A DNA stretch of 64,000 nucleotides from positions 12,834,001-12,898,000 of the forward strand of contig OZ249450.1 in NCBI GenBank assembly GCA_965235115.1, read 5' to 3'. The notes under the pieces were generated by a model that was not told the DNA's origin, did no database searches, and saw nothing but the letters and a program-made list of their open reading frames with translations. This document shows positions 3,640 to 58,400 of the stretch, piece by piece. A program made the position numbers and the translations under genes. The DNA is from Laetmonice hystrix. Its lineage: Eukaryota. The stretch's first letter is position 1, and every line of letters begins with the position of its first letter.

Positions 3640-6600
3640 TCACTGTCCCAGACAGCTCTCAATACTCTTCTCAAACAGAAGAAGGACGCGCACTCCGCGC
3701 GCCATCTCGCGGACAGCCTCGATTTCAGTCAGACCGAGTCGTCTTTTGTTGCTGACGTCATACGTTCCGTCCTCACTCTCCGTGTGCTCGCCTTGCGTGC
3801 CTGAAATGAGATCTTCTACTAATAAGGATAAAATATTATAAACAGACTGAGACCAGCAACAGCTTATACAGAGTCTACTCGGTTGAATAAACATGACAAA
3901 GATATCGAGAAACCTCTGTTATCATAGCCCATTTAACATAATTAACCTAGATTTAGATCTATAGGCCTACCCAACATCGTCTCTAAAAGATGACCCCAAG
4001 GAATGAATTTTGATCTTCTCAAATTTTTATTGAATGATCGATCAATGAAGTGACAAAATGATATAGAATAAAACTAAAGGCCATGAAGACCGGCACTTTG
4101 TTGCAGAGTAGGAAAGGTCGCCCACCTCTGACGTCGAGTCGGAGTTGAAAACAGATATCCTTAAATAGTGGCAGTGCTGACAGCCGTGGGAGCCGCATGA
4201 GGGCGCTGGCTCTGACGGTGGTACCGACGTTTGACGGACACATGGTGAGATAACCGAGTCGAGGGTGGCGGGAAAATGTCACGTGTTTCTCCAACTCTAA
4301 CACTGCCTGCAAACGATTGACAACCGTGTGTGACACTGATATATCGTGCTGAAAAGGTGTAGATCTATCAACTACATGGGGCGGGGCCAGGATTCTGGTA
4401 TTATAAGGGGAAGGTGCGGGGGCCATGGTCGATTAAACATTTTGAACGGCCTCCGCCCCTGGGTGTCGTCATTTTCTGTACAGCGGCACCACGGGAGTTT
4501 GTCTACATGTCTGGGCCACTGCTCCCGACCTAGCCACCCACCTACCCCACCTCCGCCGCACAGCCCAAACATGACGAAGTCAATCGACGGTGAGCCGAGT
4601 GGGTCTGGTTCTCCGGATTGCCTTCGAAACTGTTCCCGGCTCCCTCGCTTGGTGGCTCTGTGGTCGACCACAGAGCCACCAAGCGAGAGAACCGGGAAAC
4701 AGTTTACACACTGCCCAACACCAACGTCCAACACGGTCGATATGCGGCAGCGCCTGCTGGCGGGAATTTTGAGAACCACGAAAGAAATTCGTCACACGTC
4801 AAAGCACACGTTCAGCCTTCAACACCGCTCGTTTCGAGATTGGCTCATAGGCCATTCCGTCTTTAAGTCTTTAAAGCGTCACTCCTTCTGGAAATGTGGC
4901 TATTAAGCTTTAAGATTTCGGAAGACACGAGGCGAAGCTCAGTCAACCGAGCGTGTCAATCTGGCGGCCATGATTAGTTCCATACAAACCGCCAGACGGC
5001 AGTGATCGGGGTTAGTTCAAAGTTAAATCACCAGGCGGCAAGAGTCTCGCTTTTCTAAACCGGAAATGGCCTCGGAACTTCCAATTTGCATCATTGGTGC
5101 GTTCAAACATAGCCGTTTTGGCCGCCAAGATTAAAATTTTTTCAGGGGAGGCCCTGTGGGAGACCCCCAAAATCCCCCGCTGTCTAAACGGATCGGGCGC
5201 GTCTGAATTTTGGCGCCCGTGGGCTGAATTTGCCCCCTCACACTTTCAAAGACCTTCCTAGGCCTACGCCACTGTATTAATATGTTTAAGGTTGCCCTAA
5301 AAACACCAATTTGAAATTGCCTCGTGTCAAAAACAAAAAAGGCATAACGAATGGTTTGTGAGCTTAATCTTGTGCTTTTCCGTTGAAAGCGAATCATTGT
5401 GGGTCCGCTTAAATTCTTCCATTAGGCCTACAGACCCACAATCTCTGAATCATGCTTTCCTGATTTCCTACTAGCCTACCTAGGCCTATAGGATATCTTT
5501 GTGGAAAGTCTATAATCTGTCGAAACAATGTTATTTTCATTTACTTTGGAAAGATAATACTGTTTTCCCCTGCATTTCCTGAGCAAAACACATCTCTCTG
5601 ACTTTCCCGTTGGCCGTTTGAACCCTTCAGATAGTGAAGAAGGCTCAATAATATGTCAGACGTGGCCGTCCACAATATTAGGTCGAGATAACTTTTATGG
5701 TCTCGAATTCTACAGTAAATGCCTAATATACTGAGATACACTTAGCTAATATTAAAGACTAGGCCTACATGTACAACATATTTGATCACCTTGGCAACGA
5801 CAGCGCAGACGCGATCAAGGTGGCCCCCCTGCTCCAGGCAGAAGACCCGGATGTGGTCCTCCTCGTTGACCCAGACGTGGAGGCCGCACCCCCTGGCGGA
5901 GAATAATCCCCGACCGTTGGGCCAGTCCCGGAACATGCCGGTAGGCTCCAGGAATCTGCAGGCGGGAGTAATTTTTAGAGTACAGCGGTTTTAAATAATA
6001 TCCCCAGGTGCGTAGCTTCGATGGTACTGGAGGCACGTGCCTACACTTTCCCCCCAGAAATGAAAAAATAAAAATGAAAAAAAGAAGAAGAAAAGAGATT
6101 GCGGTTACAGTGGGTATGTAAAATATAATTAAAAATATATTCTAAAAAAATCCTTTTCCTAAACGTTCCTTACTCCGACCGCTGGCGCTTTTATTGAGCC
6201 TCTAAATCATACCCCGGTTGACAGCCATGTGCCAACACAGAATGCCACCAGACCCCCCCCCCCCTCCCTCTCCCCTGCAAAAAGTGCCTACACGTTTATT
6301 TCCGCCAAGCTACGCCCCTGATTCCCAGCACTATAGGCCTAGGCCTATATGACAACACCGTAATGTCCCGACAACACCTTACACGTGACAGGATAATTAA
6401 TTTAACAGCATTTATGCTATTCTACATCCTATACTAACAGGTAATATATACTGCTGTCGGCGAAGCATAAAACCTGAGCCCATATAAATCTAAATTGATT
6501 ACATCGACCCAGCTAGAGTGTGACCAGAATATGTCTTTTGGGATGTTGAAGACTATTGCGGTGGTAAGCGGTAAGGTGACCATCGGCAAGTTACGAGGCC

Positions 6601-9600
6601 TATCATAAGTACCGTATATAATATATTGTATTTTTCCCGTTCATGCAGCGACCTAAACGAACTCAGACTGATTATTAACTGGATAAATTTGATTAAAAGA
6701 TAAGAAAAAACATAGGCCTACAAGACTAATACCCACTGAGTTGATAATGCCGCTCCAGCGATGTTATAATATTCATGTATGCAGTCTATATATAGGTAGA
6801 CTACTGGCCGGAATCAGTGCGTGCAGTTCGACACGCAGCACCATGGCCCACCTTCATTTACGGGCAATTTGAGGCATTTCGTTCTGATTTTCCCGCGGCA
6901 GGTAACCTATCCGTGTCCCCGTGGCGCAATGGATAGCGCGCCGGACTTCTAATCCGGAGGTTGTGGGTTCGAGTCCCATCGGAGACGCTCGCTTTTAATT
7001 TTTTATATACATTCATTATATAGGCGGCCCATGACGCCATCGATTCGTTCATAGACTCGTTCACGCGTCAAAAATTTAATGTCCCCGATCCGCGTCGGAT
7101 AACAGGTCTACGTATAGGAGACTCGGTTATCGTTGAGTACTGAGAGCTAAATGCAGCCTATAGACTATAGATGGGCCTGCTTAAATTTTTAAGATGCTTA
7201 TAACTAAAATATATAGGCCTATTAGGCCTATAAAGTCTCCTTTTTTTTAGCATCAATAGGCCTAATTGACGACAGAAGATAGAAATTCTCGTCACACATA
7301 TAGACCCGAGAGGTGGGTGACGCTCTACCCATATATAGCTTACGGTAAGCCTACGTAGGCCTAGTTTTTCTCAGACTTTTCCTATTAAAGCCCTCATATT
7401 GCACTGAAGGCAAAAGTATGCCCATACCATTAAAATTATAGGCCATATACACTGGCGTATGAACCAAGGAGCCGTGAGGGGGCCATGCGTCCACTTTCAG
7501 GGGCGGGAGTAAAGATATTTTTGTGCCCCCCCACTTTCAGACCCAGAATTTTCAATATCCGCTTAAATTCTTCTAAAATTCCACCTAAATGCTTTGAGAA
7601 ACTTCACCCTTTCTATCTTCAGATGCATTTTTGGGGCCTTCTAAATTCAAAAAGTTTCTGGAGGAGAACCCCCCAGATCCTCCCTGCATGGGTGTCGCCT
7701 CGCCCGGTGCCCCCTTTCGTGCAGGCCATGGCACGTAGCCAGGTCTAATAACATAGGCCTATACCCCCACAGAAGAGCTATAAATTTGGGCACATACTAC
7801 ATTGAATATCAATACAGCACCTGCAGAGCTTTTACCTAGGGTATACTATATATATTTTGGGCCTATACTATAGGCCTAACTAAAATGGCTACCTCATAAA
7901 AACTACGGGTGATGTGTAGGTCTAGGCCTACGGCTAGGCGCTTTACCTATCAGTTTCTGGGAAGAGTAGGTGCTGGTGGAGGAGCCGTTGTTGAGTTTGT
8001 GCTGACATGTCGGTGAGCGGGCGATACGTCCCGGCCAGATCTCCCGGCAGCTCCTTCAGCGCCTCCACCATCCTCGCCTCCACCCGGAGTCGGCTCTGGT
8101 AATAACATAAAGACACCATAATGTATGCAGGTTTACATTTAGGTTCTGTTCACACCGAAACCGATGCTGACGCCGATGTGGTTTTACAACGCATCCGATC
8201 AACCATGTCTGACGCCGTAGGCCTGTAGTGCCCCCTCAACCCCATATAGGTACACCTTATTTGGACTTGACGGTAAATTTAAAATAGGTAAAGACCCACG
8301 TTTTTGCCGCTAGATCTATAGATCGGTTACCTCATTGGTGAGGACAGGGTGAAAGCCGAAGCCGTCCAGGTTACGACCGATCCGTACTCGTGTGGAGAGA
8401 ACGTGGGCACCGTCCGGGTCAAGGTTACCGAGGGTCGGATCGCCGCCTTGTGGACCGAAGTTAACGGCTGGCTGTGTGAATGCGGTGATGTCTGTGGACA
8501 GATGGTGTGCGTCTCTGATGATTGGGTAAAACAAGTCGGAGAACACTGTGTAGGCGTCGGGATCCGTCGCGTACACCCCCACCGCACTGTCCGCGTTTAC
8601 TGCACCTGTATAACAATCACCACCACCGGTATAACAATCACCACCACCGTTATAACAATCACCACCACCGGTATAACAATCACCACCACCGTTATAACAA
8701 TCACCACCACCGTTATAACAATCACCACCACCGTTATAACAATCACCACCACCGTTATAACAATCACCACCACCGTTATAACAATCACCACCACCGTTAT
8801 AACAATCACCACCACCGGTATAACAATCACCACCACCGTTATAACAATCACCACCACCGTTATAACAATCACCACCACCGTTATAACAATCACCACCACC
8901 GTTATAACAATCACCACCACCGTTATAACAATCACCACCACCGTTATAACAATCACCACCACCGGTATAACAATCACCACCACCGTTATAACAATCACCA
9001 CCACCGTTATAACAATCACCACCACCTGTATACAATCACCACCACCATTATAACAATCACCACCACCTGTTATAACAATCACCACCACCTGTATACCAAT
9101 CACCACCACCGTTATAACAATCACCACCACCATTATAACAATCACCACCACCGTTATAACGATCACCACCACCGTTATAACCGGTATAACAATCACCACC
9201 ACCACCACCCCACCGTTATAACATTTTCAACACCATCGGTATAACGTGGACCCAGTCAAATTTCCCGCGCTTGCGTTCGCGCGCTTACCTGCCGCCCCCT
9301 GGTGGCCTCACATGTTACTGTCAGTCACGGATATCATTTTATACATGGCCAAGATGGTTGGCCAACAGTTCACAACTGAGCAGCGTGTCTTTATGATCAA
9401 AACAGGTTGAAGGACGGGCAGGTTGTGATCGAAATGTCATTTATGTTAAGCCTAATGTTAAATTTTACTAATAAATGATAATCGTAATTGCAAATAAAGT
9501 AAAAATCAAAAAGAATAAAGAATAAATAAAGAATAGTTTACATAGTTTCTGAGGTTGCCTGGTTTGGCATGGACATTTTTGGGGGACACCCTGTAGTATA

Positions 9601-13669: not shown

Positions 13670-13782
13670 GATTGTTTTCTTCTCAATGAAAAACCCAAAT
13701 AACGGAACGAAATCCGTCTGTTGTTGGCGGCGGCCGTCAATGAAAACTGCGCGGTAAATCAGCAAGTCTCGTACCGACGTGA

Positions 13783-13796
13783 CAGCCACCTGGCGG
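13783..13796 (-). promoter_or_regulatory. CTCF-like motif upstream of the kinase ATG
   Basis: Reverse complement GGCCGCCAGGTGGCTG (1 mismatch), about 115 bp 5' of the start codon. Confidence 0.45.
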
Positions 13797-14257
13797 CCAA
13801 TGTAAGAACCACCAAGGGCTGCCACTTTTGAGAGTCGGCGGTTTCCGATCACCATATAAAAACGGGCGCACGATTCCACTTATTTCGAAACAAATTTAGC
13901 ATCACTCCCTTATGCTTGAAAAAAAATCTATGGTATTTCGACAGAATATAACAAACCAGATGTAGTATTTCAAACACGTGTGTATGTCACTGATCATGTA
14001 AAATGGGTTGAGGCATATTGGGTTTATGCCTTAACCATCCGGGATAATCCTCATCTGGTCATTTTCACTTGTCCCAATCTGGAACATCCTATGAAAAGTA
14101 CTGGCCTGCAGCAGTGGATTACTGTATAAACACCTTTTTGACAGTCCGTTGGGGCATAATTACCCATAATTTTTCTCCCAAGTTATGCATTTTGTTCTGA
14201 TGAAACTATTATATTAAAATGCTGGACCCAAGCCCTCCTTAAAAACTAAAACTTTTG

Positions 14258-17200
14258 CTATGAATTTTTTGAACCATTGACTGTTGTTTTTTGTTTCTTA
14301 CAATGGCAGGAAAGGGAGTTATCGTCCGTGCTACAATCTACACAGCTGCTGTCCGTTCCTCTGTCATTTCCTTTCCGACCTTTCTCTGATGTCTCCAACA
14401 TGTGGAAATATTTGTCCCGGAAAGTTCCATCTTTATAGTGGTCATGCTCATGCGACGTCACCAAGATATCATCGGACTAAAACGAATGGAAATGCATACA
14501 AAATTATAATAAATGTGGAAGTACACAACAACGTACTGCATTAGAAATATCCAGTTTTACAAATTGTATAACTTGTCTTTTCACAACAACAAGCATAGCA
14601 AATGCTGGTTCTGCTAAAAATGACATGCTTTAATTATTTAATTATTATAAGGGTCTGATAACGAAGATTCACAGCAGTATGCCAACATAAATATAGCATT
14701 TGTCCGTCATGCTTTCGTACTTCATTAAGCATTTGGGTTTGGTTTCTTTACTAATCTGTATAAGTATTTTTGGCCCCTCTTCTCATCAAAGTCGGCTCAC
14801 CCTACTGATGATAGCCTAGATGGAGTCTGACACGACCTGACTGTAGACCAGGGACTTACTGTGCACTCTTTGACCTTCTCCATGGTGATTAGCCGACGCC
14901 CGATCCTGGCTGTCATCGCCTGCTCGCTGTTAGACACCAGCTGCAGACAGGGGTGGATGGGCACGTGGTCCGGCTTGTACCTGTCACATGGCAAAGAATC
15001 GTCACAGAAGGAAAACACAGGTAGACGATTTCCTTCAAAGATGTTAGGATGTTCGAAAGATTTTTTCAGTAAACATTGAAAGGGCTGGACAAGGGTCAGC
15101 TTAACACAGCAATGAACACATTTTTTTTAAATTGTACAAATAAACAGTATTGTATTTATTTCTGCTGCATTTCGCCTTCACAGGGATGTTAAGAATCAGA
15201 AAGTGCAAGACAAACAGGCAGCTTCTTGCTTTTCCAATTTCTTCTCTTTTTTCAGTAAATAAAACTGAAGATTTTTTACACGAAAGTCTATGCATGACCT
15301 CTTCAATGTTCCAAGATTTCAACCACTCACTCCTCTCTGTCCACGGGCAGCCAATAAACCAGACGGCCTCCATGGCGTAAGTACTTAGCCGCAAAGTTGA
15401 GCAGGTCTCGCATCACATCCGATATGTGGTAGGCCACTCGACATGGAATGTGACCCTCCTTCCTGCCAAACGTGAGCCCATATTTACATGACATGAGGCA
15501 GGATACACACACTGTAAACAATAAACTTAGGGAACAGGGAATCCTACTAGTTCAAAGTCTTCGGGGATTTTTTTATAGGGGGGCAGCGGGAATGTAAAAT
15601 TTTTAACAGAAATCTAAATTCGATTATCTTGAGGTAAAGGTCTTGCCTTTACACAGCCTCTACAATCTGAACATGAATAGGAAAACAACAATTCGTCTAT
15701 TCAAATCAAAATTTTTGCCCTGAAATGTTTGACATGATCTTACAGATGGTCAGGGATTTCCATCATTTCTGCCTTTTTTCGACCAACACGTTCTGTAGGT
15801 TCTCTCACACCATATGGAGCTGAAACATGGTCACACAAACTTTTCAATCTCTAAATCAACCAATGTAACATGATAATTATCAGTTACATATAAATTTCTA
15901 TGGCATGCACTTAAGTCTCAAGCCCCTTACTCGGAATTTTAATGAGATACAGCAGGAAATTAGATTTATCAGATAAGATCAAAAATAAGAATGTGGGTAC
16001 ACTGTATGGATCAAAGAAAAACGATAGCTTACGGTCGGTGATAATAGCATCAAATATGTTGAGATGGCGCCACAAGCCATGCTGGGAGGAATCCGCGACC
16101 AAGGCATCAATATACCGATGTTCTAGTCCATACTGACCTAGGCTGGCACAGATATTATCCGTTGCCTGACTTCGCCATTTCTGGTCGTGCCTACTGGCTT
16201 TACCTGGGCATAAAAGGAAATCGATGGATGATACTGCGATGGGAATACATCACCAAGACACATACAATTGCTTCAAGCAAGTCCCAATCTTATAAAATCT
16301 TATAAAAGATTGGTCAATACCTTTAAATAATCATAATGTTCAAGTTTTTATCTTATTCTCCATTTAATGTTATAATAAGTTTTGCTTACCACGTCCCATC
16401 ACAAGTTTGTAATCAATGTCTGTTCCGCAGACATATCCTCCAAAGTGTGCACATGCAACTAAAATACTGCCTGAAAAGAACCAGAAACAACTATATATAC
16501 CGTATATACCCAACAGAATAGATCGCCGCATTTTTTCCCACAGAGACAGACTACAGGATAGTTCGCCCACTCGCCACCAGGGGTCACTAAACACGCGCAC
16601 GGAGTTACTTTTTAAATACATATGAACATATTTGTTAAATTAATTTCATATTCAGGGCTCGAAAAAAATCTACCAACTCTACTTGCCCATCGGGCAAGTA
16701 GTAGCCCAATTTTACTTGCCCGACTTATTTTTCACTTGCCCAAATTCATTTGTAGAACTTTGACTGTCAATATTACGCACCCAAACTGCACCCGAAAAAT
16801 GAGAGCTCATCATGAAAACACTGGAATGCTCAGTGAATATTTTGAAATATCTAACTAAAAGGTGCTTTTATTTGCTTTCTGTGGCTAAAGTATACTGTTG
16901 ATCTCATGATCAATTAAGCCAGCGCCAAATTGACAAGTGCTGCTTGTTGTAAACAACTCGCTCACTCAGTGACAGTGCTCACACGTGGTCCCTAGCCAAT
17001 TGAGGCATAAAAGGTCATTACACACAGCCCCCCTCTGGGCAATTCATGGTATGGCCAGAGATCTTGTTACCTACCGGGCAGGCATATCGGCAAGTTGGAT
17101 TGTATTGCATCTAATTAGGTCCTTGCGTGTAATTTCTACAGATAGTGGAGATTTTATGGATAATAATGGTGTGAACCCCAATTAATCAATGACAATAAGT

Positions 17201-20200
17201 AATTCTGGAAGGAACTGTTACACTCTGGCATCCGCAAAAAACAGCGAGTATTCACCCTAATGTGCCTCTATATCATTAAAGTTGACCCCATTGCCGACTG
17301 ATAAGTCTTGCATGTCTTCTGTATGGGGGTGCTGAAGGGAAATATACTATCCCGTCACAAGGTGGCAGAACCAGCCGGTCTCGGTCGGTTTTGTTAGTTA
17401 CACTCGGTTTCGTGAAAGTCAGAGTCACCCCAAAAGTGGAGGCGTGTGGTCGCCGTAGATCTTAGGCCGAGAACAAGGCCTGGTTGATTTTTTTCTTTGT
17501 CTTTGCTTTACTCGTCCGGTCGGACGACTGGCATTAATATTTACTCGTCCAAAGCAATTTTTTAGTCGTCTCGGACGATCGGACGTGGGTTTTTTCGAGG
17601 ACTGATATTGCTGCAATTTTATCTTGCATAATTATTTTCATACTTTTTTTTTATACTGTATGGTTCATAACACTAAACCCCAGCATCTTACATCCTGCCT
17701 TGACACCTGGCAGAACAAGGGCAGCAAGCCCGCTCACTCAATGAGACACCTAGTGGTTACCGAATGAACTAGACTGGTCACTATGGCCATCTGTGATGGA
17801 TGTGAAAGGGGGGGGGGGGTTTCTGGGGGCAATCAGGCCATGCAAATGGAACATTGATGAGGATATAGCCCTCTAAAGTTTCTTCAAAAAATGTGGATTG
17901 ACATTGGTACTGACCAAATGACAATTTTTACCTCTAGAGGGGATATTATAAAAGTGCTCAGATAATATCACTTACCTGTTCCTACAAAAGGATCAAAGAC
18001 AAAATCGTCGGGTTTTACTTCGGCCATGTTTGCCATTATTAGAGACAGCCCGGCATCCATACTTGTGTTTCCTAAAAATGTAGTCACTTAAATTTACTTT
18101 AAGGCCTGGGAAAGAAAGGTGACAACATTGGACGCTCAAATCGTAATAAGTGATCTACTCTCTCCATAATCCTTTATAAATTGATTCAGACTAGAATTCT
18201 CAATAATAATTGATAAAACAAATATTTTTGACAGACCTTGAACCTAAGAATCTGTCTGATTTTCTGGACATGTTATCAAATCTATACCATGTCAAAAGAT
18301 GAACCTCTGAAATCCTTTGTATACCTCACCTAGATATTTCCTTTTTTGTAGATGGTATTTTTTAATGACACTCCGCTGTCCATCTGCAACCTGAAAAGGG
18401 TCGGCATTGGGGTATGCTTAAACAATGTGCTTCCCAGTATTTAGAATAATATTCCTGGAACAAATCTCTGCTTAACTCCAATTAAAAATCAAAGGGAAGG
18501 GGGCTCATACATAAAAAAAACAACCACTTCTTGGTGGGAGATCATACAGGAACAATTGTTATAACTTCAGGTAGTTTAAATGATGGCTTTCTCTCGGGCA
18601 CAGTATCGAAAGTATACACACCCATCTCCCAAAATAAATACGCTCAGGTTGATCTGGTGAATGGCCAGCTTGACGGCCGTAGTCCTCCAGCAGGTGGAAG
18701 ATTTGTTCTGGAGCTGATGTTGACACATTGCCCCGAAAACCAAATGTCTTCATTTCCATTACATGCTGGATGTACAAAAAGAAAAAATACAATGTCAGTG
18801 GCAGATCCAGTAGGGGGGCTTTGGGGTACATTGCCCGTGATAACTTAAACGCCAGGGAATTTGGTCGAAAATAAAGATACATAGCCCTGACCTTTTCCCT
18901 AACCCTGGCCCTACACGTCCCTAAACATATCGCTATCCTATCCCTGGATCCTCAAATCCTGGATCTACCCCTAAATGCCTATGATCATTACGGCAAGACA
19001 TAGAAAAATATGCTTTTAACTGTGAAACTTGAAACATATTTACAATTATACCTTGTAGATCATTAAAAGCTTTAATTATCATATTATCTCTAACACAGAG
19101 GCTGCCCACTCCAAATCCACATGTTAATTAAACAATGTTAAACACTTACATCAATCTTTTCAAGTTTCTCAGGAAATGACAAATTCTTGTTGAAGGTTTC
19201 CATGCGTATACACATTCTAACATCCTCGTTGACAAATGGTTCCTATTAAAAAAATCAGGTTTGTCACCTCATTAAATTATTCATATAATTAATATTTACC
19301 CAGGACCATTTTACCTATCTCCTATTTCATGCATAAATTAAGATTTTTTTTGTATGGGGGAAATTTTCAAAGCTATATCCCCAAAGTAGATAACAATAGG
19401 TCTGTTACCTTGAGATGTTTTGGTATACATCCTATGTCTTGTTCTAATTCTCCATATGTCTGTCCTTGACCCCAAAGTTCAAACAGTGATCTGAAAGAAT
19501 ACATCATGTCAAACAAGGCCACAATTCACCAGAGGGGCAGTAAAGCCATTTTTAGGACAAGTGTAGTACTTTTTCCAGACTTGAGCACATATTTATCAAA
19601 TTCCTGGGGTGGATTGCACTAACGGTCCTACGGGATAGGACTGAATTTAGGACCAGTCCTACTGAGTGTCATGCCCCCCAAGCACTTCATATCTATCTGA
19701 GTTTCAATAGCCCTTGAGATATAAAAGTTGACGAATTACATTTAAATTATGGATATTGGCCACTGTTGAATGTAGGGCAGTCCTAAATTCAGTCCTAACC
19801 TGTAGGACCGTTAGTGCAACCCGCCCCCGGACTTTTCCCGGCCCGGGAGGCCCTAATATAAAAATTCCGGACTTTTCCCGGTTTTCCGGACCCGTGGGAA
19901 CCAATACCATGCACACTGGCCTTTACTTTGTTATTGGTACAAGCCTACTTTTGAACTTGCCTTCTTTAATGTCTTATCAACTTGGCCTTATTAATTTTTC
20001 ATGGGGAATGGGATTCGTGATTCCACAGAATCATGATATGTAGTTTTTTATATTTCTACGTACTTGCTGAGTATACTTCTGGACAATAATCTCCTGGCGC
20101 ATTCCTCCGAATCCACGTCAATCAGAAGAAAGGGACTCTACAAAAATCACACGCAATAATGTTTGATAAAAGTTTATTGGCAGTATAAACATACATTGGT

Positions 20201-31600: not shown

Positions 31601-33984
31601 AAGGTTGCATGTCCTAGCTGACCCGTGTTTTGTTGGCCATTGTTTGCCCCCAGCAGGCTGCCCCGCCGCCCACCAAGGAGGTCACATTCCAGGCCCACGA
31701 ACCATCCGTTGTAGAGGTTGGGGCGGAAAGTGAGGTTGCTGAGGGTTCCACAATCCCCCAACAGGTGGCGCTTCATTAACAGCTTCTTAATCCTTTATTA
31801 ATTATTCATTTCTTTTTCTTCTTTTTGCTTGAATCATTCTTGCTTCATGGCAGTGCTTGACCTACTTCACCCAAAATAATTTTGATCATTTGTGCACGTT
31901 GTTCAGATTACGTTTTTCAGTTTTCAAATTCATGTTTCATCGGTTTTTTGTTTCTCAGCAAGACTCATAACACATGACTTGGAAAGCACAACTGACATCC
32001 AGGCTTGGAACCCTTGCTCCTTTGTTGCCTTTTCTACTGTAGGCCTACCACTGGCAGCTACAGCTTCACCTATTGCCAACTGAATAACTTTAATGTTTTG
32101 TTTTTTTTACTGTGGCATATTACAACATTTTGTGTGTTATCTTAGTAAAAGTTGTTACTGCATTTTTGATGAAGAAGCAAACTTCTGACTGTAGCGGAGA
32201 ATCCTCCTAATTTTGGATTACCATTTACATTTAAAATGAAAAAATTAATTATAACTGACTTCTCTCCAATTATTAGCCTGAACCTGAAGTCATACCGGTA
32301 ATCTTAATCAATATTGTATACACTACTCACCGATACATACTTATAGTATAGAAAAACTTCAGAAGACATCACCATCTTGTGACACAAGGACACTTTTCTG
32401 ACAACACTTAGAACCTTGAGCTTAGCCAACTTCGGAATCAATGTAACTTGCAAAAACAATTAAACAACTTCCCTCCCATTATTAGCCTGAACCTGAAGTG
32501 GTACCTGTATTCTTAAATCAATATATTGTAAACACCACTCACCAAGTAGCGGAGAGAAGATCACCATTCTGTGACACAAGGATAATTTTCTGGCAATATA
32601 TACAAGTTAAAGCTAAACTCTATTGAATTTGGTTTCCACGTCAGACTGCAGCGATGGCCCAATGTCACGTACCCGTTCTAAAAATTGAACGACCTGGGAG
32701 CCCCCTAGTCGCTCGCTCTGGTGTGGCCTGTGCTTCCTCGGGGAACGGAGCGTTCAATTTTTAGAATGGGTACGTGACATTTGGCCATCGCTGCAGTCAG
32801 ACGGAATTCAATAGAGTTTACCTTTAAATAACAATCTTTAAGTTAACTCAACTTTAGAAACACCTTCTTTACTGTTACATTTAACGTGTAAAACCATTTA
32901 CTGACTTTTGTCCAATTATTAGCCTGAACCTGAAGTTATACCGGTAATCTCAATATTTCGAACACTGTATGCCGCGTGTAAGAGAAAACACCACCATCTG
33001 GACAGTTTACTAATGACACTTACTAGTTAACTAACAACCATACTCACCTACAACTATTATCCCTAGTAGAGTTAGAGCATTAGGCTGAGGCAATCCCTCT
33101 GGTATCAAAATGCAGAACTTTAGAAAATTTCATATAATTTGCATGCATTGCATTTGCAGATCCTTTCCTATGCCATATCTCAGCTTATAAAATAGAAATT
33201 GTAATGCTACGAGAGATAAGTTGTTTGTAGGCATGGTCAGTTTGAGGTTTCACTGTCTGCATGACGTCACGTCAATAAAACCCTGACCCGGTCTATAGCC
33301 GGTCTGGGGTGTTCAGTCACTGAGGCATGATGCTTAATGTTTGCTTGATTGTGCCTTGTCGCCGTCAAGGATGAAGACGAAGGTGCAGTCAGTCTAAGAG
33401 GAGCGGGCTGGACGGTCCCGCAAACTGACTATGACTCCGACGCCAGCAGCCTGCCTGGTGGCAGAGGTGAGTCACATGACCGTGCCCTCCACCAATCAGA
33501 TGTGATGTAATATAAGAAATATGGCCTTTATGTTCTTGTTTTACAAAGTGAAGAATGTAGTCTCTGTAAATGCTTACATTTTTTCTATGCTTAAGAACAT
33601 TAGTTCACATTGTAGTAAGCTTGGCTTTCCTAGAGCAAGTATTCCTCTACATTAAATGGCTTATGCTACTGCTAGCAGGTACTGCTTGATTCCCTGGACC
33701 AACTTGTGACGACATAACTGGCGTTTTTTGATGGACCCTTTCACCGACTCGCTCAAAATCCAAAATGAATCTTTACCATGTCGTTGACTTTTTTTCCAGT
33801 ACTGGGAAAAGTACGAGGAAAAACGAAATACTACCAAGGTAAGAACAGTGGATGTTTTATTATGTTAGTAAAATTTCAATTATGATTTACAAAATTCCTG
33901 AATTATAAGTGATTTATAGATGCTTGAAAAGAAATCAGATGACCAAGGTGTGGCAACTGGTTCATAATTTCAGGAGAGTTCTAG
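22605..33984 (+). CDS. C8orf34: C8orf34/VEST1-like protein with N-terminal Dpy-30/RIIa-type dimerization-docking domain, about 554 aa, about 20 exons
   Basis: Exons 22605-22667, 24004-24090, 24498-24537, 24848-24892, 25471-25563, 26068-26234, 26454-26590, 26877-27025, 27279-27346, 27449-27545, 27888-27962, 28985-29055, 29277-29310, 29562-29640, 29893-30058, 30452-30487, 31654-31764, 33370-33466, 33800-33838, 33974-33984; phases close without stops. Family-like motifs: RVQEYLQKHKIGNLFEEMMAKVISDMPDEPVIYL, YTKPWQ, YEGPRRPYTEDDDPLAGE, DLRKEGV, VSICARCAK, TDEDDEFESVSQVTGP. The 3' exons are less certain. Confidence 0.8.
22835..23238 (+). mobile_element. Helitron-like non-autonomous element, copy 1 (intron 1 of the C8orf34-like gene)
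   Basis: Reverse-complement match to 38667-38964 plus 39716-39797. Internal 60-bp tandem duplication (22944 and 23004) of a palindromic unit; GC-rich GAGCTCGCTTGCGCTCGCTA end. The superfamily assignment is inferred. Confidence 0.7.
25693..26033. mobile_element. Degenerate CAG-terminated MITE
   Basis: CAGTGTTCTCGCCAGA versus TCTGGTGAGAATCCT, with internal repeated CTACGCTGTC/CTATGCTGTC motifs. Confidence 0.45.
32255..33030. repeat. Degenerate triplication of an about 210-bp unit in a C8orf34-like intron
   Basis: The block CC(A/C)ATTATTAGCCTGAACCTGAAGT recurs at about 32266, 32475 and 32912, each followed by similar downstream sequence (CACCAT...GACA). Confidence 0.7.
32607..32827. mobile_element. 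TTAA-flanked MITE with about 85-bp imperfect TIRs (Kolobok-like)
   Basis: TTAAAGCTAAACTCTATTGAATT...GACTGCAGCGATGGCC...ATGTCACGTACCC...CTAAAAATTGAACG and its inverse, ending GAGTTTACCTTTAA. Confidence 0.8.
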
Positions 33985-38666: not shown

Positions 38667-39797
38667 TAGCGAGCGCAAGCGAGCCGCGCAGCGGCTCGCG
38701 AAGCGAGCTCTATGACAACACGTGTGAAAGGGTTGCCAAGGTGACACATACCGTCTCACAAAAAAATTTCGTCACGTAAAACCGGAACCGGAAAAACCAT
38801 GGAGCAAATCCATGGAGAAATCCATGGAGGGTCATGTGACCCTTTCAGAGCGTGTGTGATTTGTGACGTCACAGTGAACAAACAGTCACGTGAGTGTTTG
38901 TTCACTGTGACGCCACAATATCCTGACGTCCGTGCTGCTAAGTAACCAGTCCTGACATTGTATTTAGGGAATAACCCATGATGTTTCGCGCCCAAGGTGC
39001 CGTTATCGCTGTCTAACCTAGCGCTCGGGCTCCGCCCTCGCGCTAGGTTAGACAGCGATAACGGCACCTTGGGCGCGAAACATCATGGGTTATTCCCGTT
39101 ATACCACGTTTTTCCAGCAGTTTTTTTAAGTAAACAGAAGAATCCATAGTAATGGTCACGTTTGACATCTAAACATAATTTCCTACAACCTCAAGCTACC
39201 TACGCTGGCGGCCATTCCCAATCCTTGTCACCGTAATATAAAACAAGAGTTCTAAATGGTCAGATTTGATGGCTGTTCTAAGAAAACTCCGCACCCCTCC
39301 CATACTATCATTTGACCTTCCCTCTGGAATCACTGCTTATGGGGTGGATGAACTTTACCTGGAACAGCCTCACGCTCTTTTCTAATGTAACGGCTACTCT
39401 GATTGGTCCGACAGATAATAACGAACACATTCCGTCATTACGCTTCGCCAGTGATGATCGACTGTAAATATGACAATCGGCGTATTATCTGCACGTTTCT
39501 AGCACAGTTAGGTGATATAGTAAATAGTTTTAGTGGATTTCTTTGATATTATACAGACTGCATGAGGATATGTCTTTGCTTACGTCGAGTAATCGGTGAA
39601 AGAAAAGTTGAGTCGAAGCCTCGCTTCCAACAGCTCTAGCAGTGCGGTTATCCAGTTCTAAGGTAACGCTAATCGAGGTGATAACTCACGCTAACGACGC
39701 CCAGCGTGGTATAAATATTGTTATACAGTGTGTACTTATAATATTGTAGGCCTCCCGTCGCTGCGCTCGCCCTCTAGGTAGCACCTACATCATATTA
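38667..39797 (-). mobile_element. Helitron-like element copy 2, interrupted by an about 750-bp insertion
   Basis: Inverted copy of 22835-23238, split at about 38965-39715. Confidence 0.7.
38965..39715 (-). mobile_element. Helentron-associated (HINE/DINE-like) non-autonomous element with a terminal 58-bp perfect hairpin
   Basis: Subterminal inverted 10-mers TTATACCACG (39099-39108) and CGTGGTATAA (39705-39714). Perfect inverted arms 38967-39024 and 39040-39097 lie next to one subterminal repeat; A/T-rich insertion flanks. Confidence 0.6.
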
Positions 39798-52449: not shown

Positions 52450-53275
52450 GATGAGGGTCAGTCGGAGGGTGGAGGAGGGAACCTTCATATACCAAACCCG
52501 AGAGGATAAGGTGCATGGTGCACTGAGAGAGGATGGGGGGGGGGGGGGCTGAACCCGTCACGTGGGGTGGGATCCATGGCCGGCAAGATTAGATAATAGG
52601 CCTCAACTTTGTTTGGAGTCGACCAAGGTGAACGCCAACTGTATTCTCTACAGTGCGACTGGCATGATACGGTAATCGCGAGAAGATAAAAATATTAGAT
52701 AGATATGTATTTTCTGCGGTGGGTTAGGCCTAGTCTTAACACTTACGTGGCAGGAACCAAGTCGGGGGTTTATTCATAAAAATCTAAAGTCGTCGGTACA
52801 CTACAGGTACAGGGCGAGTAAAAAAAACAACTATACCCTCAATAATATGCTGATGAATCAGATAGCTTATTTGGCAAAATCAGAACACAGTAATTGGTAC
52901 AGAAAAAGTTACTATTGTGCTTCAATTTGGTGGTTGATCCACTCGGATGTGACCAATAATATCAAAATAATGGCTATTTAAAAAAAAAGGCCTACCACTT
53001 GAACTAAGCTATAGGGAGACTAGGCCTATAGGGAGACTCAATCCAAACAAGCACGTGAGTTAGGCCTATAGTCTTTCTGTACCAATTAGGCCTACTATAT
53101 ATTACCCTTATCTTACCAATATCTGATTCATCAGCCTAATTTTGAGTGTATGGTTTTTTTACTCGCCCTGTAGGCCTATAAAAATATCCCACCACAATAC
53201 TGCTTTCCTTGTCGGTAGATTAAAGTCGCCATTGTTTGTGAAGGAAAGGAACTCGAGAATTCCTTGACCTTGCTT

Positions 53276-54124
53276 CATTAATACTGGACATGATCACTAG
53301 TAGCCAGTTTATCGGGCTCCTTCTTCACGTCTTGTATAATGTGCCTCATTAATACTGGGCATGATCAATAGTAGCCAGTTTATCGGGCTCCTTCTTCACG
53401 TCTTGTGTAATGTGCCTCATTAATACTGGACATGATCACTAGTAGCCAGTTTATCGGGCTCCTTCTTTACGTCTTGTATAATGTGCCTCATTAATACTGG
53501 ACATGATCACTAGTGGCCAGTTTATCGGGCTCCTTCTTCACGTCTTGTATAATGTGCCTCATTAATACTGGACATGATCACTAGTGGCCAGTTTATCGGG
53601 CTCCTTCTTCACGTCTTGTATAATGTGCCTCATTAATACTGGGCATGATCAATAGTAGCCAGTTTATCGGGCTCCTTCTTCACGTCTTGTGTAATGTGCC
53701 TCATTAATACTGGACATGATCACTAGTAGCCAGTTTATCGGGCTCCTTCTTTACGTCTTGTATAATGTGCCTCATTAATACTGGACATGATCACTAGTGG
53801 CCAGTTTATCGGGCTCCTTCTTCACGTCTTGTATAATGTGCCTCATTAATACTGGACATGATCACTAGTGGCCAGTTTATCGGGCTCCTTCTTTACGTCT
53901 TGTATAATGTGCCTCATTAATACTGGACATGATCACTAGTGGCCAGTTTATCGGGCTCCTTCTTCACGTCTTGTGTAATGTGCCTAATTAATACTGGACA
54001 TGATCAATAGTAGCCAGTTTATCGGGCTCCTTCTTCACGTCTTGTGTAATGTGCCTCATTAATACTGGACATGATCAATAGTAGCCAGTTTATCGGGCTA
54101 TACTTCTTCACGTCTTGTGTAATG
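53276..54124. repeat. 71-bp minisatellite, 12 copies, upstream of the SDR gene
   Basis: Unit CATTAATACTGGACATGATCACTAGTAGCCAGTTTATCGGGCTCCTTCTTCACGTCTTGTATAATGTGCCT; copy 1 at 53276 and copy 12 at 54057 (11 x 71). Confidence 0.97.
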
Positions 54125-54694
54125 GATTCACCCCGAAATTCGAGCCCGGATGGGAGCGAGCGATTATCATGTCGCGCGCGCATCTGGTGGAAATTACTAC
54201 AATCTCTTAAACTATTTCTATACTTTTGACGGAAATCGGGTATAATTATAAAGACCACCCATAATTTGAGATCCGCTGATATTAACAACCCGTCATTCTT
54301 CAGATACCAATCATGACAATTCCATCGGCGATTTTAATTGCAGAAATATTTCATTTATTTATTCACTCAATATACAATAGCACGTTCTCCTGTAACGGCT
54401 GCCTTTATTAATTCTATGCACGAACTCTATCTTTACTCTATGTTCGAGCTGTACAACTCATTTTCCCGTCAGTAGTAATACGCGTTCATTTATAGTTAGC
54501 AACACGCCCTCCCCCTCTGTCCAGTTTGGTTTAGAGGACATTAAATTTACTAGCGGAACTTCTGAATTTACCACGCTGACCCCCCGGGGCGGAACCAGGT
54601 GCTCTGTAGGGGGGGGGGGGGGTGCGCGCACCATCAAAGATATAGACCTGTACTTGTGAGGTCTCCAAAGTATAGGACTGTGCATCGGTGCTTA

Positions 54695-55088
54695 GGCCAA
54701 AAAAAAAAATAGATTCGTTTCTTGTCCCCGCGCGCGTCACCTAAAAACCCCCGCGTCAAGTCTTTTTTTTTTTTCAAATCCGACTGCTTCATATGGTGGG
54801 CAGTGTAGCGCTGTGACAGAACGTTGCAACGGTTCTTTGGCGTTGGCGTTTTTCTGTTAGTCTTGTTGACTTTAGGTGAGTTTTACACGTTCTAAAACAT
54901 TGAACATCATTGTATTGGTCTTTTCTTCAAGATTTATGTACCCAACAGCAATTGCATTCGAAGAATCGGCCGTTGTCTAGTTGCATCCAAAAAAAAAAAG
55001 AAAGACCAAAAAAAAAAAAAAAACCGCGTCACCGCACCATTTTTTTTATATGAAAGGACAAGAAACGAAACTTTTTTTTTTTTTGGCC
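54695..55088 (-). mobile_element. PIF/Harbinger-like MITE, copy 2 (inverted relative to copy 1)
   Basis: Near-identical reverse complement of 51248-51622; GGCC termini, TTA on both flanks. Confidence 0.8.
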
Positions 55089-55497
55089 TTATCACTATTT
55101 TACGACTACTTAATAGGCCTACATAGGCCTATAGGTTCCAAGTTCCAAGATTTAAAATGCGGGTCATGCGAGCGCCGAAGGCGCGAAGCCCCGAGTGGGG
55201 AATCTGGGGGCCCTCACCCAAACAAATATGAAAATTAAAGTGCCAAATACGCGTTTTTTTCTGGCATCTCAGACCAAATTCCAAGGTCTTACAGTTAGCA
55301 GAAAAAAGTTTTTTTTCATTAGCAATTCGTTAAAAAGTCAGTCTGCAAAAAGGGACCCAGTGCCCCCCCCCCCCCGGTGATCCGCGGCTGCCCCCTTTGC
55401 AAATTCTCCCCCTAACCGTCCTTACCAAAATCCTAGATCCGCCCCTGTAATTCTGTAAGATATGCAAAATGAGCATAGTATTTCCAGACGCTTTCAT

Positions 55498-58400
55498 TCA
55501 CAGTTTACTCCCAAGGTTGTACAGATGGAACAAGTTGACACAGAACGACACAAGGTTGGCCACCGACGACAGGCCATGCCAATAGAGGAAGTTCTTGCGG
55601 GTTTTCGCGTAAGTTTCGTTCTTCTGAAGTTCCGGGTAGGTTTTGTAACCGACCTCGTTCCCGACCCCGGCCTCCTTCTCGATACTGTACATGCGGTCCA
55701 TGTTTCTTAGGTTGCCTGGGACCAGAATGAACCGGTTTATGACGATCACGACAATAGCTGCTCCCATGACTGCCACCTAAAAATTAAGGGAAACAATTAT
55801 ATGGCATGGACAGAGAAATAGCTTTGCTGATTTCTAAAAGTATACTCTGGGAATGGCGTTTAGATTTTAAACAGAATCCTATACACATTTTTGTCCCCAC
55901 TTTTTTAACACATCATTGGTCTAAACATGTCAAGAACACTAGTTTGAGTCTAGTCTTGAACTGTCTGGAAGTAAATCATGATACACAGAGGCGGATCTAG
56001 GGGGGGGGGGGGGCAGGGGCCCGCCCCCCCCTAAATTTTGGACAAGTATACAAAATGTAGTATAACTTAGGCCCAAATGAACCCAGCCACCCCATTCGAG
56101 CAGTAAAGTAAGGTCTAAGAGTAAACCTGGAGATTTATGAAGATTGAAATTTGTATAAAACATAAAAGGGTCCTATATATTATGCGTAAAAGGTCCATTT
56201 TAAGAGATCAAGCAGCCCCCCCCCCTCAAAAAAAAGAAGAAGAAAAGTCTGTGTATCGGCGTGGTAAGGAAACTTTCGTGAGGTTGTACCAACCTGAATC
56301 CATTCCTCAGTGGTAAAATGGTCAAACATATGTAAGTAGGTCATGAGCTGTATGACTGATGTGATCAGACCGAGGGTGAAGTAACGAGGGAAGAGTTTCG
56401 ATTGGACGGCACCAAAGTCATGACGTCGTAACGTCCTGATCATCGTCACACCTAAAAAATAATAAATTATAAATAAAAGATAAATCAATACCATCTCTAG
56501 AGAGGCGCATATATGGAGCATTGTACCTCGGCCTAAGCAGTGGGAAGGGGTAGAATTTTGATAGGGGCCTATATATGTAGGGTAGGCCCCTTAGCCTATT
56601 CAGGATCCTTAGACTGAGATTAGCCTATCCTGGATAAGATAGGTGTAGCCCCATAGGTAAATATAGATTGATAGATAAATCAACCTTTTATTATAATAGG
56701 CCTATGTATATGCCTAGAGGATTATGCCATTTTTTCAATATAGACCTAGACCTAGCAGATTTCTTAGCCTCCACCCGTCTGAAAATTAGGCCTGGGCCTA
56801 ATCTTGGCCTGGAGACACCCCCTATCGTGGATCAGGAAAGTGGAAAACCTTTTGGTGGATAATCAGCCCATTTTCAGGAGGCCCCATAATTTCTTTTTCA
56901 GGAACGCTAGCTGGCGACGTGTTTTTGAACATTTCTCACAACTCTTTCAATGAAATTCCTTTCTTTTTGTGTGTGCACGAAACATAGAAAATAGGCAAGA
57001 GTTGGTGCCCCCCTATTATGTCCTTGTCCAATCAGAGGATAGGCCTACATGCAGGCATAGGCCTACAGCCTAATTATACCACGGCCTTTTGGAAACCTAG
57101 CTCTCGGCCTCTTGCCGAGGCCGTCGACTAACGAGGTGCTCTGCGGTGTGCGCCAACAACGTGCCACACGGTCAATATGCGGCAGCGCCTGCTGGCGGGA
57201 ATTTTTGGAAACACGAAATAAATGACACTTTCTGCGACGTATACAGGCATATGTTTAAACGCGAATCATTCGGGATGATTTGACGATCCACTTATAATCT
57301 TTAAAGAGAACTGAATTTTAATGGTCAATTCAGTCAGTGACGTAACGTGTTATTCCTGCTTCCGCCATGAATGTCTGACGGCCGACAGCAGCGCCACTGG
57401 TGGCCTGGAATGATTAGTTCCACATAAACCGCTAGATGGCAGTCAGAAGTTTTAGTTTACTGTTAAAACGATAGATGGCAGCACAGGACCTTCCGTCCAA
57501 CAGTTTCAAAGGTGGCCGCTTGGGGTCCTGGGGGTCAGATCTTAGATCTAGGCCTATTTCATGCTCAGCCGACAATCAAGATCCAAGATAGGCATTTACG
57601 ACAAGCTAGGTTTTTAGCCCCCCCCCCCAGCAAATTTGCTGGATAAATCTAGGGCCTATGCTCCAGAAATTGAGCTGGAAAGGACGTTAAAACTGGCATT
57701 CTTCCTAAAACATAGTAGTATAGGCTATAGCCATTAAGTTAGGCCCATTAAGTTAGTTAGGCCTATAGGCCTAATAGACATTTCCTCCCTGCGCGGCACT
57801 AATTCCTGAACTTTTAGGATTATAGCAGATATAGGCCCTACCTATAGGTCTGTATTTTGTTATTTTATAAAATATAATAGTCATACCTGCAATGAAACTA
57901 ACCCAGAACTGGGTTCCAAAGTGAGTCGCGAACGCCCCGAGGTGAATCACCTTGTGTAGGGTGATTAAGTTGACATGTCCAACACTTGGGTAGAAAGAGT
58001 AACTCAGGGCGATTACAGCGACACCTACCGCCAGATGTATCGGCCACATGACCCTGAAACATGACAAGGAGGTGGTATTGATTTCTGATCAGCGAGGGAC
58101 GGTCAAGGTTAGAGCAGGTGTAGGCTACAGCAGGTAGCAGGGTACTATGACATCGGCGAAACAGTTGGGGGGGGGGGGCAGGTCCATTCATGGTATAGGG
58201 CCGACTGGGGTGCATGGATCAACAATTTTGGGAGAGGAAATTCAGAAATTAAATAATGCCAAATGGGGTAGGCTACTGCGGGTGTCTATAGCCTAGGCCT
58301 ATATTTTCCGATATTTTCTTCCGGCCTTTATCTCCACCAATCTCCACCAAATGTCTGAATTAATTTTCAAGTATGGGTCTAAAATGCATGCCTGCAACAA

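What the first reader, a model, noticed from the sequence alone, without database searches (positions are those of the whole stretch)
4731..57482. Two diverged copies of a divergent-orientation CTCF-motif cassette bracket about 52 kb of the gene cluster
Seen: 4731-5041 and 57166-57482 share short conserved blocks, while their spacers have diverged heavily. The conserved parts are largely CTCF-like motifs with conserved spacing (motif 1 to 3: 242 versus 247 bp; motif 3 to 4: 39 bp in both). Order in both copies is reverse, reverse, forward, forward relative to CCRCYAGRKGGCRS. Motif 3 of copy B is a full match; the others have 1-3 mismatches and motif 2 is only a half site. Known: in vertebrates, divergent CTCF clusters mark domain boundaries, convergent pairs anchor cohesin loops, and transposons spread CTCF sites. 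Inference: a repeat-borne boundary cassette under motif-level selection in a spiralian. The forward sites of copy A and the reverse sites of copy B would form a convergent loop.
Basis: partly seen in the sequence, partly recalled or inferred. Interest (0 to 1): 0.75.

Follow-up and report, generated by a model that had tools for sequence, protein, structure and literature searches.

The report
Repeat-borne CTCF-site cassette, two copies
Two 320-base stretches 52 kb apart in an annelid genome share short repeat modules that each carry a complete vertebrate-style CTCF binding site; the pairing is real, but nothing shows that they fence off a gene cluster or anchor a loop.

Summary
4719-5041 and 57154-57481 share two blocks (89% and 73% identical) in the same order, with spacing that differs by 5 bp. 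Their spacers and flanks are no more alike than shuffled sequence.

The motifs are credible CTCF sites. The core consensus is about 25-fold over-represented in the window. Many sites, including independent single-copy ones, carry a TRGTTCY element 7-8 bp upstream of the core, as in the vertebrate two-part CTCF site.

Laying public contigs of the same animal on copy A changes the reading. The spacer is single-copy, but both blocks belong to dispersed short repeat families: hundreds of contigs for block 1, tens for block 2. Other loci join block 1 to block 2 with only 15 or 31 bp between them. Within the blocks, non-motif letters are conserved almost as well as motif letters. The likeness is therefore block-wise, as in repeat modules, not motif-wise.

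Copy A sits in an intron of a phosphagen kinase gene. Copy B lies about 0.65-0.95 kb upstream of a DUF4149 gene. The genes between them are unrelated, and at least eight other good CTCF-type sites of both orientations lie between. The boundary and loop reading is not supported.

The scan had already met CTCF-type motif clusters on other pieces of this genome.

The parts
4719..4788 (-). Block 1, copy A. Reverse two-part CTCF-type site: core 4750-4763, 8-bp gap 4764-4771, upstream element GGTTCT at 4772-4777 (read on the minus strand). The stretch shared with most other genomic copies is about 4732-4778.
   Evidence: D10; multi-copy; loose ends at 4731/4732 and 4775/4778
4789..4960 (.). Spacer of copy A. 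Single-copy in the animal's contigs and not alignable with the spacer of copy B. Holds a CCAAT-type GATTGG at about 4841.
   Evidence: (only the native contig in bins 4810-4959)
4961..4969 (-). Motif 2, copy A: reverse half-site (GGCCGCCAG on the minus strand).
4970..5041 (+). Block 2, copy A: tandem pair of a ~39-bp unit. Each unit is a forward two-part site: AGTTCC 4976-4981 + 7 bp + core 4989-5002; AGTTCA 5014-5019 + 8 bp + core 5028-5041.
   Evidence: (D11); (4970-5002 is multi-copy; 26 contigs read T at 4997)
57154..57223 (-). Block 1, copy B. Reverse site with core 57185-57198, identical to copy A; the upstream element is degraded to GTTTCC.
57391..57405 (-). Motif 2, copy B: reverse near-site (GCCACCAGTGGCGC, one base short of the consensus spacing).
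57410..57481 (+). Block 2, copy B: AGTTCC 57416-57421 + 7 bp + core 57429-57442 (full match); AGTTTA 57454-57459 + 8 bp + core 57468-57481.
   Evidence: D4
4510..4599 (.). Another multi-copy short module directly left of copy A, absent at copy B.
4633..4698 (.). Perfect-stem palindrome (33-nt arms, no loop). It is itself a multi-copy dispersed module; other copies carry 25-30 nt in the centre.
   Evidence: (I18)
5050..5109 (.). Moderately repeated module right of copy A, holding CCGGAAAT and ATTTGCAT words.
13783..13796 (-). Independent two-part CTCF-type site (GGTTCT + 8 bp + core), about 115 nt upstream of the phosphagen kinase ATG.
16574..16587 (+). Independent two-part site (AGTTCG + 8 bp + core).
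17743..17756 (-). Independent two-part site (AGTTCA + 8 bp + core).
31758..31771 (+). Independent two-part site (GGTTCC + 8 bp + core).

Best explanation
A and B are two copies of a small dispersed cassette assembled from short repeat modules, each of which is a complete two-part CTCF binding site: an upstream TRGTTCY element, a 7-8-bp gap and the core. Block 1 carries one reverse site and belongs to a family with hundreds of contigs. Block 2 carries a reverse half-site and two tandem forward sites and belongs to a family of tens. The cassette, or its modules, spread by copying; the mechanism is not identified, as no terminal inverted repeats or target-site duplications were seen. The DNA between the modules differs from copy to copy. 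Inferred, not shown: the worm's CTCF binds these sites and they act locally. B would lie in the probable promoter region of a DUF4149 gene and A would be an intronic CTCF cluster in the phosphagen kinase gene, as CTCF motifs do in the annelid Dimorphilus. They would not form a dedicated pair of loop anchors around 52 kb.
For: Blocks are alike; spacers and flanks are not. Contigs of the same animal laid on 4450-5349: only the native contig covers 4810-4959. About 970 contigs per run pile on 4510-4599, 4630-4689, 4720-4779 and 4960-5019. Dozens run on into unlike sequence at 4731/4732 and 4775/4778. Four to six contigs join block 1 to block 2, two of them with only 15 or 31 nt between. Within the blocks, non-motif letters are 76% identical against 89% for fixed motif letters, as expected for copied modules. 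CTCF reading: the core is 11 vs 0.43 expected. RGTTC sits exactly 8 bp upstream in 4 of 24 independent core hits (p = 1e-6), and every RGTTC found within 40 nt upstream of a core hit sits at a gap of 7, 8 or 10 nt. Nine two-part sites are found vs 1.1 in shuffles. This matches the vertebrate upstream motif CTGCAGTTCC and the ~7-8 bp spanned by ZF8 (PMC12885311; PMC10484683). At core position 9 of motif 3, 26 family contigs carry the consensus T, as in B. Substitutions between A and B in motifs 3 and 4 fall mostly on degenerate positions. Context: A lies between Pfam-supported kinase exons and B lies 5' of the DUF4149 ATG. CpG o/e is about 1.05 at both against a median of 0.66. In Dimorphilus, CTCF motifs are mostly at promoters and show no orientation rule (PMC7854359).
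Against: No binding, accessibility or contact data exist for this animal, and no RNA run was found. The copying mechanism is unknown: there are no TIRs, no tRNA-like head and no Rfam match, and the ends are too fuzzy to score target-site duplications. Summed contig depth is not a copy number (the tool's own warning). Near-consensus 33-bp two-part sites could align at 80% by convergence, so the block 2 family may be smaller than it looks. Two cassettes within 52 kb, with spacers of nearly equal length (181 vs 186 bp) but unrelated sequence, are not explained by random dispersal.
Confidence: 0.55

Rival explanations
1. An ancient duplicated boundary cassette is kept by selection on its CTCF motifs. 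Its divergent sites insulate, and the forward sites of A loop to the reverse site of B, enclosing a 52-kb regulatory domain.
For: The sites are credible two-part CTCF sites. A and B are the only multi-site divergent clusters in the window. Two cassettes 52 kb apart are unlikely if a small family were spread at random. Spacing is kept within 5 bp. Substitutions in motifs 3 and 4 favour degenerate positions.
Against: The blocks are multi-copy modules and are conserved block-wise. A lies inside a gene's intron, so the 'domain' would cut the phosphagen kinase gene. The genes between are unrelated. Sites at 5886(-), 9292(-), 11320, 13783(-), 16574(+), 17743(-), 31758(+) and 52156(-) lie between and would compete. 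No orientation rule is known in Dimorphilus or echinoderms (PMC7854359, PMC13317027). Earlier follow-ups on this genome found orientation patterns compatible with chance (s1-334686, s1-353747; not re-tested here).
Confidence: 0.08
2. The blocks are the cis-acting ends of a non-autonomous transposon family: conserved ends, unrelated interiors, similar lengths, local hopping. The CTCF-like words are its transposase or other mobilisation sites, with no CTCF function.
For: Conserved ends with variable interiors and compact variants with 15-31 bp interiors. Block-wise conservation. Motifs in opposite orientation at the two ends. Two copies close together, as after local transposition. The region around A is a patchwork of other short multi-copy modules, including a foldback palindrome.
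Against: No terminal inverted repeat between the ends beyond the motif itself (score 8-9, equal to shuffles). No target-site duplication is evident. Block 1 is far commoner than block 2. The same two-part motif, with the same 8-bp gap, occurs at independent single-copy sites with unrelated flanks, one of them 115 nt upstream of a gene's ATG. That fits a host factor's site, and the site matches vertebrate CTCF's two-part site.
Confidence: 0.12
3. An old local duplication of one regulatory element. All of each ~70-bp block is under purifying selection because CTCF and neighbouring factors bind there, the spacer has drifted to randomness, and no mobility is involved. The 'families' seen in the contigs are convergent near-consensus sites.
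For: Same order, orientation and nearly the same spacing. Proximity of the two copies. The family-conserved stretch of block 2 (4970-5002) coincides with the U + gap + core footprint. The blocks hold extra factor-like words: ATATCGACC and GGGAATTTT.
Against: Block 1 piles up hundreds of contigs at 80% or more over 44-47 nt. That stretch includes the 8-bp gap and 18 nt 3' of the core, which CTCF recognition would not fix. The 30-mer identical between A and B spans such letters. Other loci link the blocks with 15 or 31 bp. A spacer drifted to randomness would hardly keep its length within 5 bp.
Confidence: 0.15
4. Chance resemblance of two GC-rich stretches.
For: None beyond the short length of the blocks.
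Against: z = 13.4 and 9.8 against shuffles. nhmmer E = 1e-13 and 1e-7. The 22-mer is found twice against 0.00 expected.
Confidence: 0.01

Closest known systems
Repeat-borne CTCF sites of mammals (SINE B2 and related expansions)
   Same: Complete CTCF sites are carried on short dispersed repeats and thereby multiplied across the genome. The site is the best-kept part of the copies.
   Different: No Pol III head, tail or any SINE or TE hallmark was found here. The modules are only about 45-75 bp as detectable. The host is an annelid, and binding is untested.
Vertebrate two-part CTCF site (core bound by ZF3-7, upstream motif by ZF9-11, ZF8 bridging about 7-8 bp)
   Same: The core fits CCRCYAGRKGGCRS. 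The upstream TRGTTCY equals the 3' half of CTGCAGTTCC. It sits on the same side with the same 7-8-bp gap, both in the cassette sites and in independent sites.
   Different: The upstream motif is reported as absent from Drosophila CTCF peaks and was suggested to be vertebrate-restricted (PMC12885311). Here it is seen in a protostome, but only as sequence statistics in one 64-kb window.
Divergent CTCF clusters at vertebrate TAD boundaries and convergent loop anchors
   Same: Each cassette has reverse sites on the left and forward sites on the right, about 240 bp apart.
   Different: There is no contact map. One cassette is intronic and many competing sites lie between the two. Orientation rules have not been found in Dimorphilus, echinoderms or flies.
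CTCF motifs in open chromatin of the annelid Dimorphilus gyrociliatus (PMC7854359)
   Same: An annelid in which the CTCF motif is abundant and often promoter-proximal. Here 13783(-) lies about 115 nt upstream of a start codon and B lies upstream of the DUF4149 gene.
   Different: Dimorphilus sites are mostly single. Here they form multi-site cassettes carried by repeats.
MITE-like non-autonomous DNA transposons
   Same: Conserved ends, unrelated interiors of similar size, compact variants, clustering.
   Different: Terminal inverted repeats were tested and not found. Target-site duplications are not evident. The two ends differ greatly in abundance.

Membership tests
Two-part CTCF binding site | Match to the core consensus CCRCYAGRKGGCRS | tested here: met
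   B3 0, A3 1, A1/B1 2, B4 2 and A4 3 mismatches. Motif 2 is a half-site only. Window-wide there are 11 hits with at most 1 mismatch against 0.43 expected.
Two-part CTCF binding site | Upstream motif (…AGTTCC) on the 5' side, separated by the ~7-8 bp that ZF8 bridges | tested here: met
   RGTTCY lies at a 7-8-bp gap in A1, A3, A4, B3 and B4 and in four independent sites. p = 1e-6; 9 sites vs 1.1 in shuffles. Reference values come from PMC12885311 and PMC10484683.
Two-part CTCF binding site | Occupied by CTCF in vivo or in vitro | not testable with these tools
   No ChIP, CUT&Tag, ATAC or EMSA data. No RNA or chromatin runs were found.
Two-part CTCF binding site | The genome encodes CTCF with ZF3-7 and ZF9-11 contact residues | not tested
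   CTCF is not in this window. Earlier notes s1-334686 and s1-353747 say the genome encodes CTCF; this was not checked here.
CTCF/cohesin loop anchors or TAD boundary | Convergent orientation of the two anchors | tested here: inconclusive
   The geometry is met (A forward 4989/5028, B reverse 57185). It follows automatically because each cassette holds both orientations.
CTCF/cohesin loop anchors or TAD boundary | The anchors delimit a coherent regulatory unit without stronger intervening sites | tested here: not met
   A is inside a kinase intron. At least eight other sites with 0-2 mismatches, four of them two-part, lie between. The genes are unrelated.
CTCF/cohesin loop anchors or TAD boundary | Insulation or a focal contact in Hi-C/Micro-C | not testable with these tools
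   No contact data available.
Dispersed repeat / transposable element | Many copies at unrelated loci | tested here: met
   about 970 contigs per run lie on the modules. Dozens continue into unlike flanks. The spacer is covered by the native contig only.
Dispersed repeat / transposable element | Terminal inverted repeats (DNA transposon or MITE) | tested here: not met
   block 1 vs the reverse complement of block 2 scores 8-9, equal to the shuffle mean; no flanking inverted repeat specific to the cassette.
Dispersed repeat / transposable element | Target-site duplications at defined ends | tested here: inconclusive
   None was seen by inspection, but the ends of the unit are not defined.
SINE | Pol III head (tRNA, 5S or 7SL-like) and a tail | tested here: not met
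   ARAGORN and Rfam find nothing at A or B. No A-rich or simple-repeat tail.
Segmental duplication | Homology continues into the flanks and the interior | tested here: not met
   flanks z = -1.8 and 0.0, spacer z = 1.4.

The most novel reading that the evidence does not exclude
This annelid uses the full vertebrate-type CTCF recognition mode: core plus the ZF9-11 upstream motif across an 8-bp ZF8 bridge. It multiplies such high-affinity sites on short repeat modules. Divergent multi-site cassettes such as A and B would then be real insulators or loop anchors, so both two-part recognition and orientation-dependent CTCF architecture would predate vertebrates. The first half alone, a two-part motif in a protostome, is fairly likely (about 0.5) on the window statistics. 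The full claim is not excluded but has no direct support.
Probability: 0.07. Interest if true: 0.8.

Novelty: new member of a known kind. Interest (0 to 1): 0.4.

Why it matters
Whether CTCF's architectural role, and the site grammar behind it, is a vertebrate invention or a bilaterian inheritance is an open question (PMC13317027, PMC10658181). This locus does not answer it. It does show that an annelid genome carries many complete two-part CTCF-type sites with the same upstream element and the same 7-8-bp gap as in vertebrates. A recent paper suggested this feature may be restricted to vertebrates (PMC12885311). It also shows that such sites are multiplied on short repeat modules, as in mammals. 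That gives a concrete, cheap test set for CTCF CUT&Tag, ATAC footprinting and Micro-C in a spiralian. For the window itself the result is sobering: the '52-kb bracket' is a coincidence of two repeat-borne site clusters, or a local duplication, not a demonstrated domain.

Tried and rejected
- Terminal inverted repeats between block 1 and block 2, within and across copies: none beyond the motif.
- Extended homology of spacers and flanks: none.
- Further copies of any module in the window by nhmmer: none.
- Structured RNA or small-RNA gene reading: Rfam at gathering and at E up to 1 finds nothing at A or B. The only matches are chance hairpin hits on the neighbouring palindrome.
- tRNA-derived SINE head: none. 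The only tRNA is tRNA-Arg at 6915-6988.
- Motif-wise against block-wise conservation between A and B: only marginal (p = 0.05-0.14). I therefore do not claim motif-level selection from this pair.
- TAGGCCTA words flanking B looked like possible inverted ends. They are ubiquitous in the window (40 hits), so this was rejected.
- Metagenome scan for the block 1 23-mer: 0 hits.
- Protein word search with the DUF4149 exon, meant to fetch orthologous loci: no hit.
- RNA evidence: no RNA run holds the region.
- A shared GGTCGATATG word between block 1 and the subterminal repeats of the element at 20.6-21.8 kb: judged too short to link them.


Full report
**Observation**

- Block 1 is 4719-4788 vs 57154-57223. 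It is 62/70 identical and includes an identical 30-mer.
- Block 2 is 4970-5040 vs 57410-57480. It is 52/71 identical.
- The blocks lie in the same order and orientation. Their offsets are 52435 and 52440, so the internal spacing differs by 5 bp.
- Against shuffles the blocks score z = 13.4 and 9.8. The 181/186-bp spacers (z = 1.4) and the 200-bp flanks (z = -1.8 and 0.0) are no more alike than chance.
- nhmmer finds no further copy of either block in the window.
- The motif layout is as stated: reverse site, reverse half-site, forward, forward. Core starts are 4750(-), 4989(+), 5028(+) in A and 57185(-), 57429(+), 57468(+) in B.
- The constant 39 bp between motifs 3 and 4 arises because block 2 is a tandem pair of one ~39-bp unit.

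**Are the motifs CTCF sites?**

Writing all hits in motif orientation showed an unexpected regularity: a hexamer RGTTCY, usually preceded by T, lies 7-8 nt upstream of the core.
- It is present in five of the six full cassette sites (A1, A3, A4, B3, B4); in B1 it is degraded to GTTTCC.
- It is also present in four independent sites with unrelated flanks: 13783(-), 16574(+), 17743(-) and 31758(+).
- Among 24 core hits outside the cassettes, 4 carry RGTTC at exactly 8 nt (p = 1e-6).
- Every RGTTC found within 40 nt upstream of a core hit lies at a gap of 7, 8 or 10 nt; none lies at any other offset.
- Nine two-part sites are found against 1.1 in shuffles, with a maximum of 3.

This matches vertebrate CTCF.
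- An upstream motif 'resembling CAGCTGTTCC / CTGCAGTTCC' is read by ZF9-11 and typically sits across a 5-bp linker plus a TGG-like triplet (PMC12885311).
- ZF8 spans about 7-8 bp of minor groove (PMC10484683).
- The same paper reports no such motif in Drosophila CTCF peaks and suggests that it may be vertebrate-restricted.

So the motifs here are best read as real CTCF sites of the high-affinity, two-part kind. That the genome encodes CTCF comes from earlier notes of this scan and was not checked here.

**What the blocks are**

Three public runs of one sample hold this locus, as Logan contigs. Their contigs were laid on 4450-5349 at 80% likeness.
- Bins 4810-4959, the spacer, are covered by the native contig only.
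- About 970 contigs per run pile onto five short stretches: 4510-4599, the palindrome at 4630-4689, block 1 (4720-4779), block 2 (4960-5019) and 5050-5109.
- Summed word depth is 600-1000 times the single-copy value on block 1 and about 20 times on block 2. The tool warns that this is not a copy number, so I use it only as 'hundreds' against 'tens'.
- Dozens of contigs run on into unlike sequence at 4731/4732 and at 4775/4778.
- The stretch of block 1 shared genome-wide is therefore the upstream element, the gap, the core and 18 nt 3' of the core. For block 2 it is 4970-5002, which is the upstream element, gap and core of motif 3.
- At 4997, core position 9, 26 contigs read T. T is the consensus letter and is also the letter in B.
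- Four to six contigs carry block 1 followed by block 2. Two of them have only 15 or 31 nt in between.
- Another contig has block 1 followed by the palindrome, the reverse of the order in the window.

The two 'diverged copies' are thus built from modules that are repeated elsewhere, and the interior between the modules varies from locus to locus.

**Motif-wise or block-wise conservation?**

I classified the aligned block positions and counted identities between A and B:

| Position class | Identical |
|---|---|
| Fixed motif letters | 32/36 |
| Degenerate motif letters | 16/24 |
| Non-motif letters of the blocks | 69/91 |

The contrast is marginal (Fisher p = 0.05-0.14). In motifs 3 and 4, seven of the nine substitutions fall on degenerate positions (R, Y, K or S) and the highest-information letters are kept, which is suggestive. 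But the blocks are conserved as blocks. Together with the unrelated spacers, this fits copied modules better than one old duplicate shaped only by selection on motif letters.

**Copying mechanism**

No mechanism could be identified.
- There is no inverted-repeat relation between the two ends beyond the motif itself.
- No target-site duplication is obvious.
- There is no tRNA-like head and no Rfam match.
- TAGGCCTA words around B looked like possible inverted ends, but that octamer is ubiquitous in the window.
- One contig subfamily continues coherently to the right of 4778, with 0.63-0.68 agreement. At least some block 1 copies are therefore parts of longer repeats.

**Context**

Pfam places exons of a minus-strand phosphagen kinase at 13289-13879, 5742-5936 (profile 45-98), 4019-4426 (profile 93-157) and 3640-3894.
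- Copy A therefore lies in an intron of about 1.4 kb.
- Copy B lies about 0.65-0.95 kb upstream of the ATG of a minus-strand DUF4149 exon (56180-56521).
This is not a cluster of related genes.
- Between A and B lie good CTCF-type sites at 5886(-), 9292(-), 11320/11323, 13783(-), 16574(+), 17743(-), 31758(+) and 52156(-).
- CpG o/e is about 1.05 at both cassettes against a window median of 0.66. This is mild support for unmethylated, possibly bound DNA.

**Comparison with what is known**

[quoted passage not shown] It lies mostly at promoters, is mostly single, and shows no directional arrangement (PMC7854359).
- Echinoderm TAD boundaries are enriched for CTCF motifs without any orientation pattern (PMC13317027).
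- A review found only one spiralian study, on a squid, that implicates loop extrusion (PMC10658181).
- Earlier follow-ups of this scan found CTCF-type motif clusters common on other pieces of this genome and found no orientation grammar (s1-334686, s1-334725, s1-353747).

My window-level counts agree on abundance. I did not re-test orientation statistics beyond this window.

**Verdict**

The claims of motif-level selection since an A-B duplication, of a boundary around a gene cluster, and of a convergent 52-kb loop are not supported. Two things remain unexplained: why two cassettes lie so close together, and why their unrelated spacers have nearly the same length.

The by-product most worth following up is the vertebrate-like upstream motif and 8-bp gap at CTCF-type sites in a protostome.

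Noticed in passing
window-wide; clusters at 5259-7930, 52725-53178, 55114-58679: The palindromic octamer TAGGCCTA occurs 40 times against 0.78 expected from dinucleotide shuffles. Its flanks are unrelated, so it is a free-standing over-represented word, not part of one repeat.
   Followed up: partly
13783-13796(-), 16574-16587(+), 17743-17756(-), 31758-31771(+): Independent CTCF-type cores each carry RGTTCY exactly 8 nt upstream, a vertebrate-like two-part CTCF site in an annelid. The literature at hand reports the upstream motif as absent in insects and possibly vertebrate-restricted.
   Followed up: yes
4633-4698: Perfect-stem palindrome (33-nt arms, no loop) that is itself a multi-copy dispersed module. 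Other genomic copies have 25-30 nt inserted at the centre. Foldback or MITE-like.
   Followed up: partly
20581-21840: An element of about 1.26 kb with inverted arrays of subterminal GTCGATATGGCCCA repeats at both ends, and proline-rich low-complexity repeats inside. Likely a non-autonomous DNA transposon.
   Followed up: no
22999-23228 and 38701-38930: 230-nt inverted repeats, 97% complementary, 15.5 kb apart. They may be the ends of a large element. ORFs inside have no Pfam match.
   Followed up: no
51252-51617 and 54703-55080; 53129-54209: Inverted ends of about 370 nt (81-100% complementary in pieces) of a 3.8-kb element that contains a 71-bp tandem array of about 15 units.
   Followed up: no
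8498-9274: A 21-bp minisatellite (about 37 units) next to or within a phosphagen kinase exon. It reads GGGDCYN in the gene's frame.
   Followed up: no
6915-6988: tRNA-Arg (TCT) gene on the plus strand inside an intron of the minus-strand phosphagen kinase gene.
   Followed up: no
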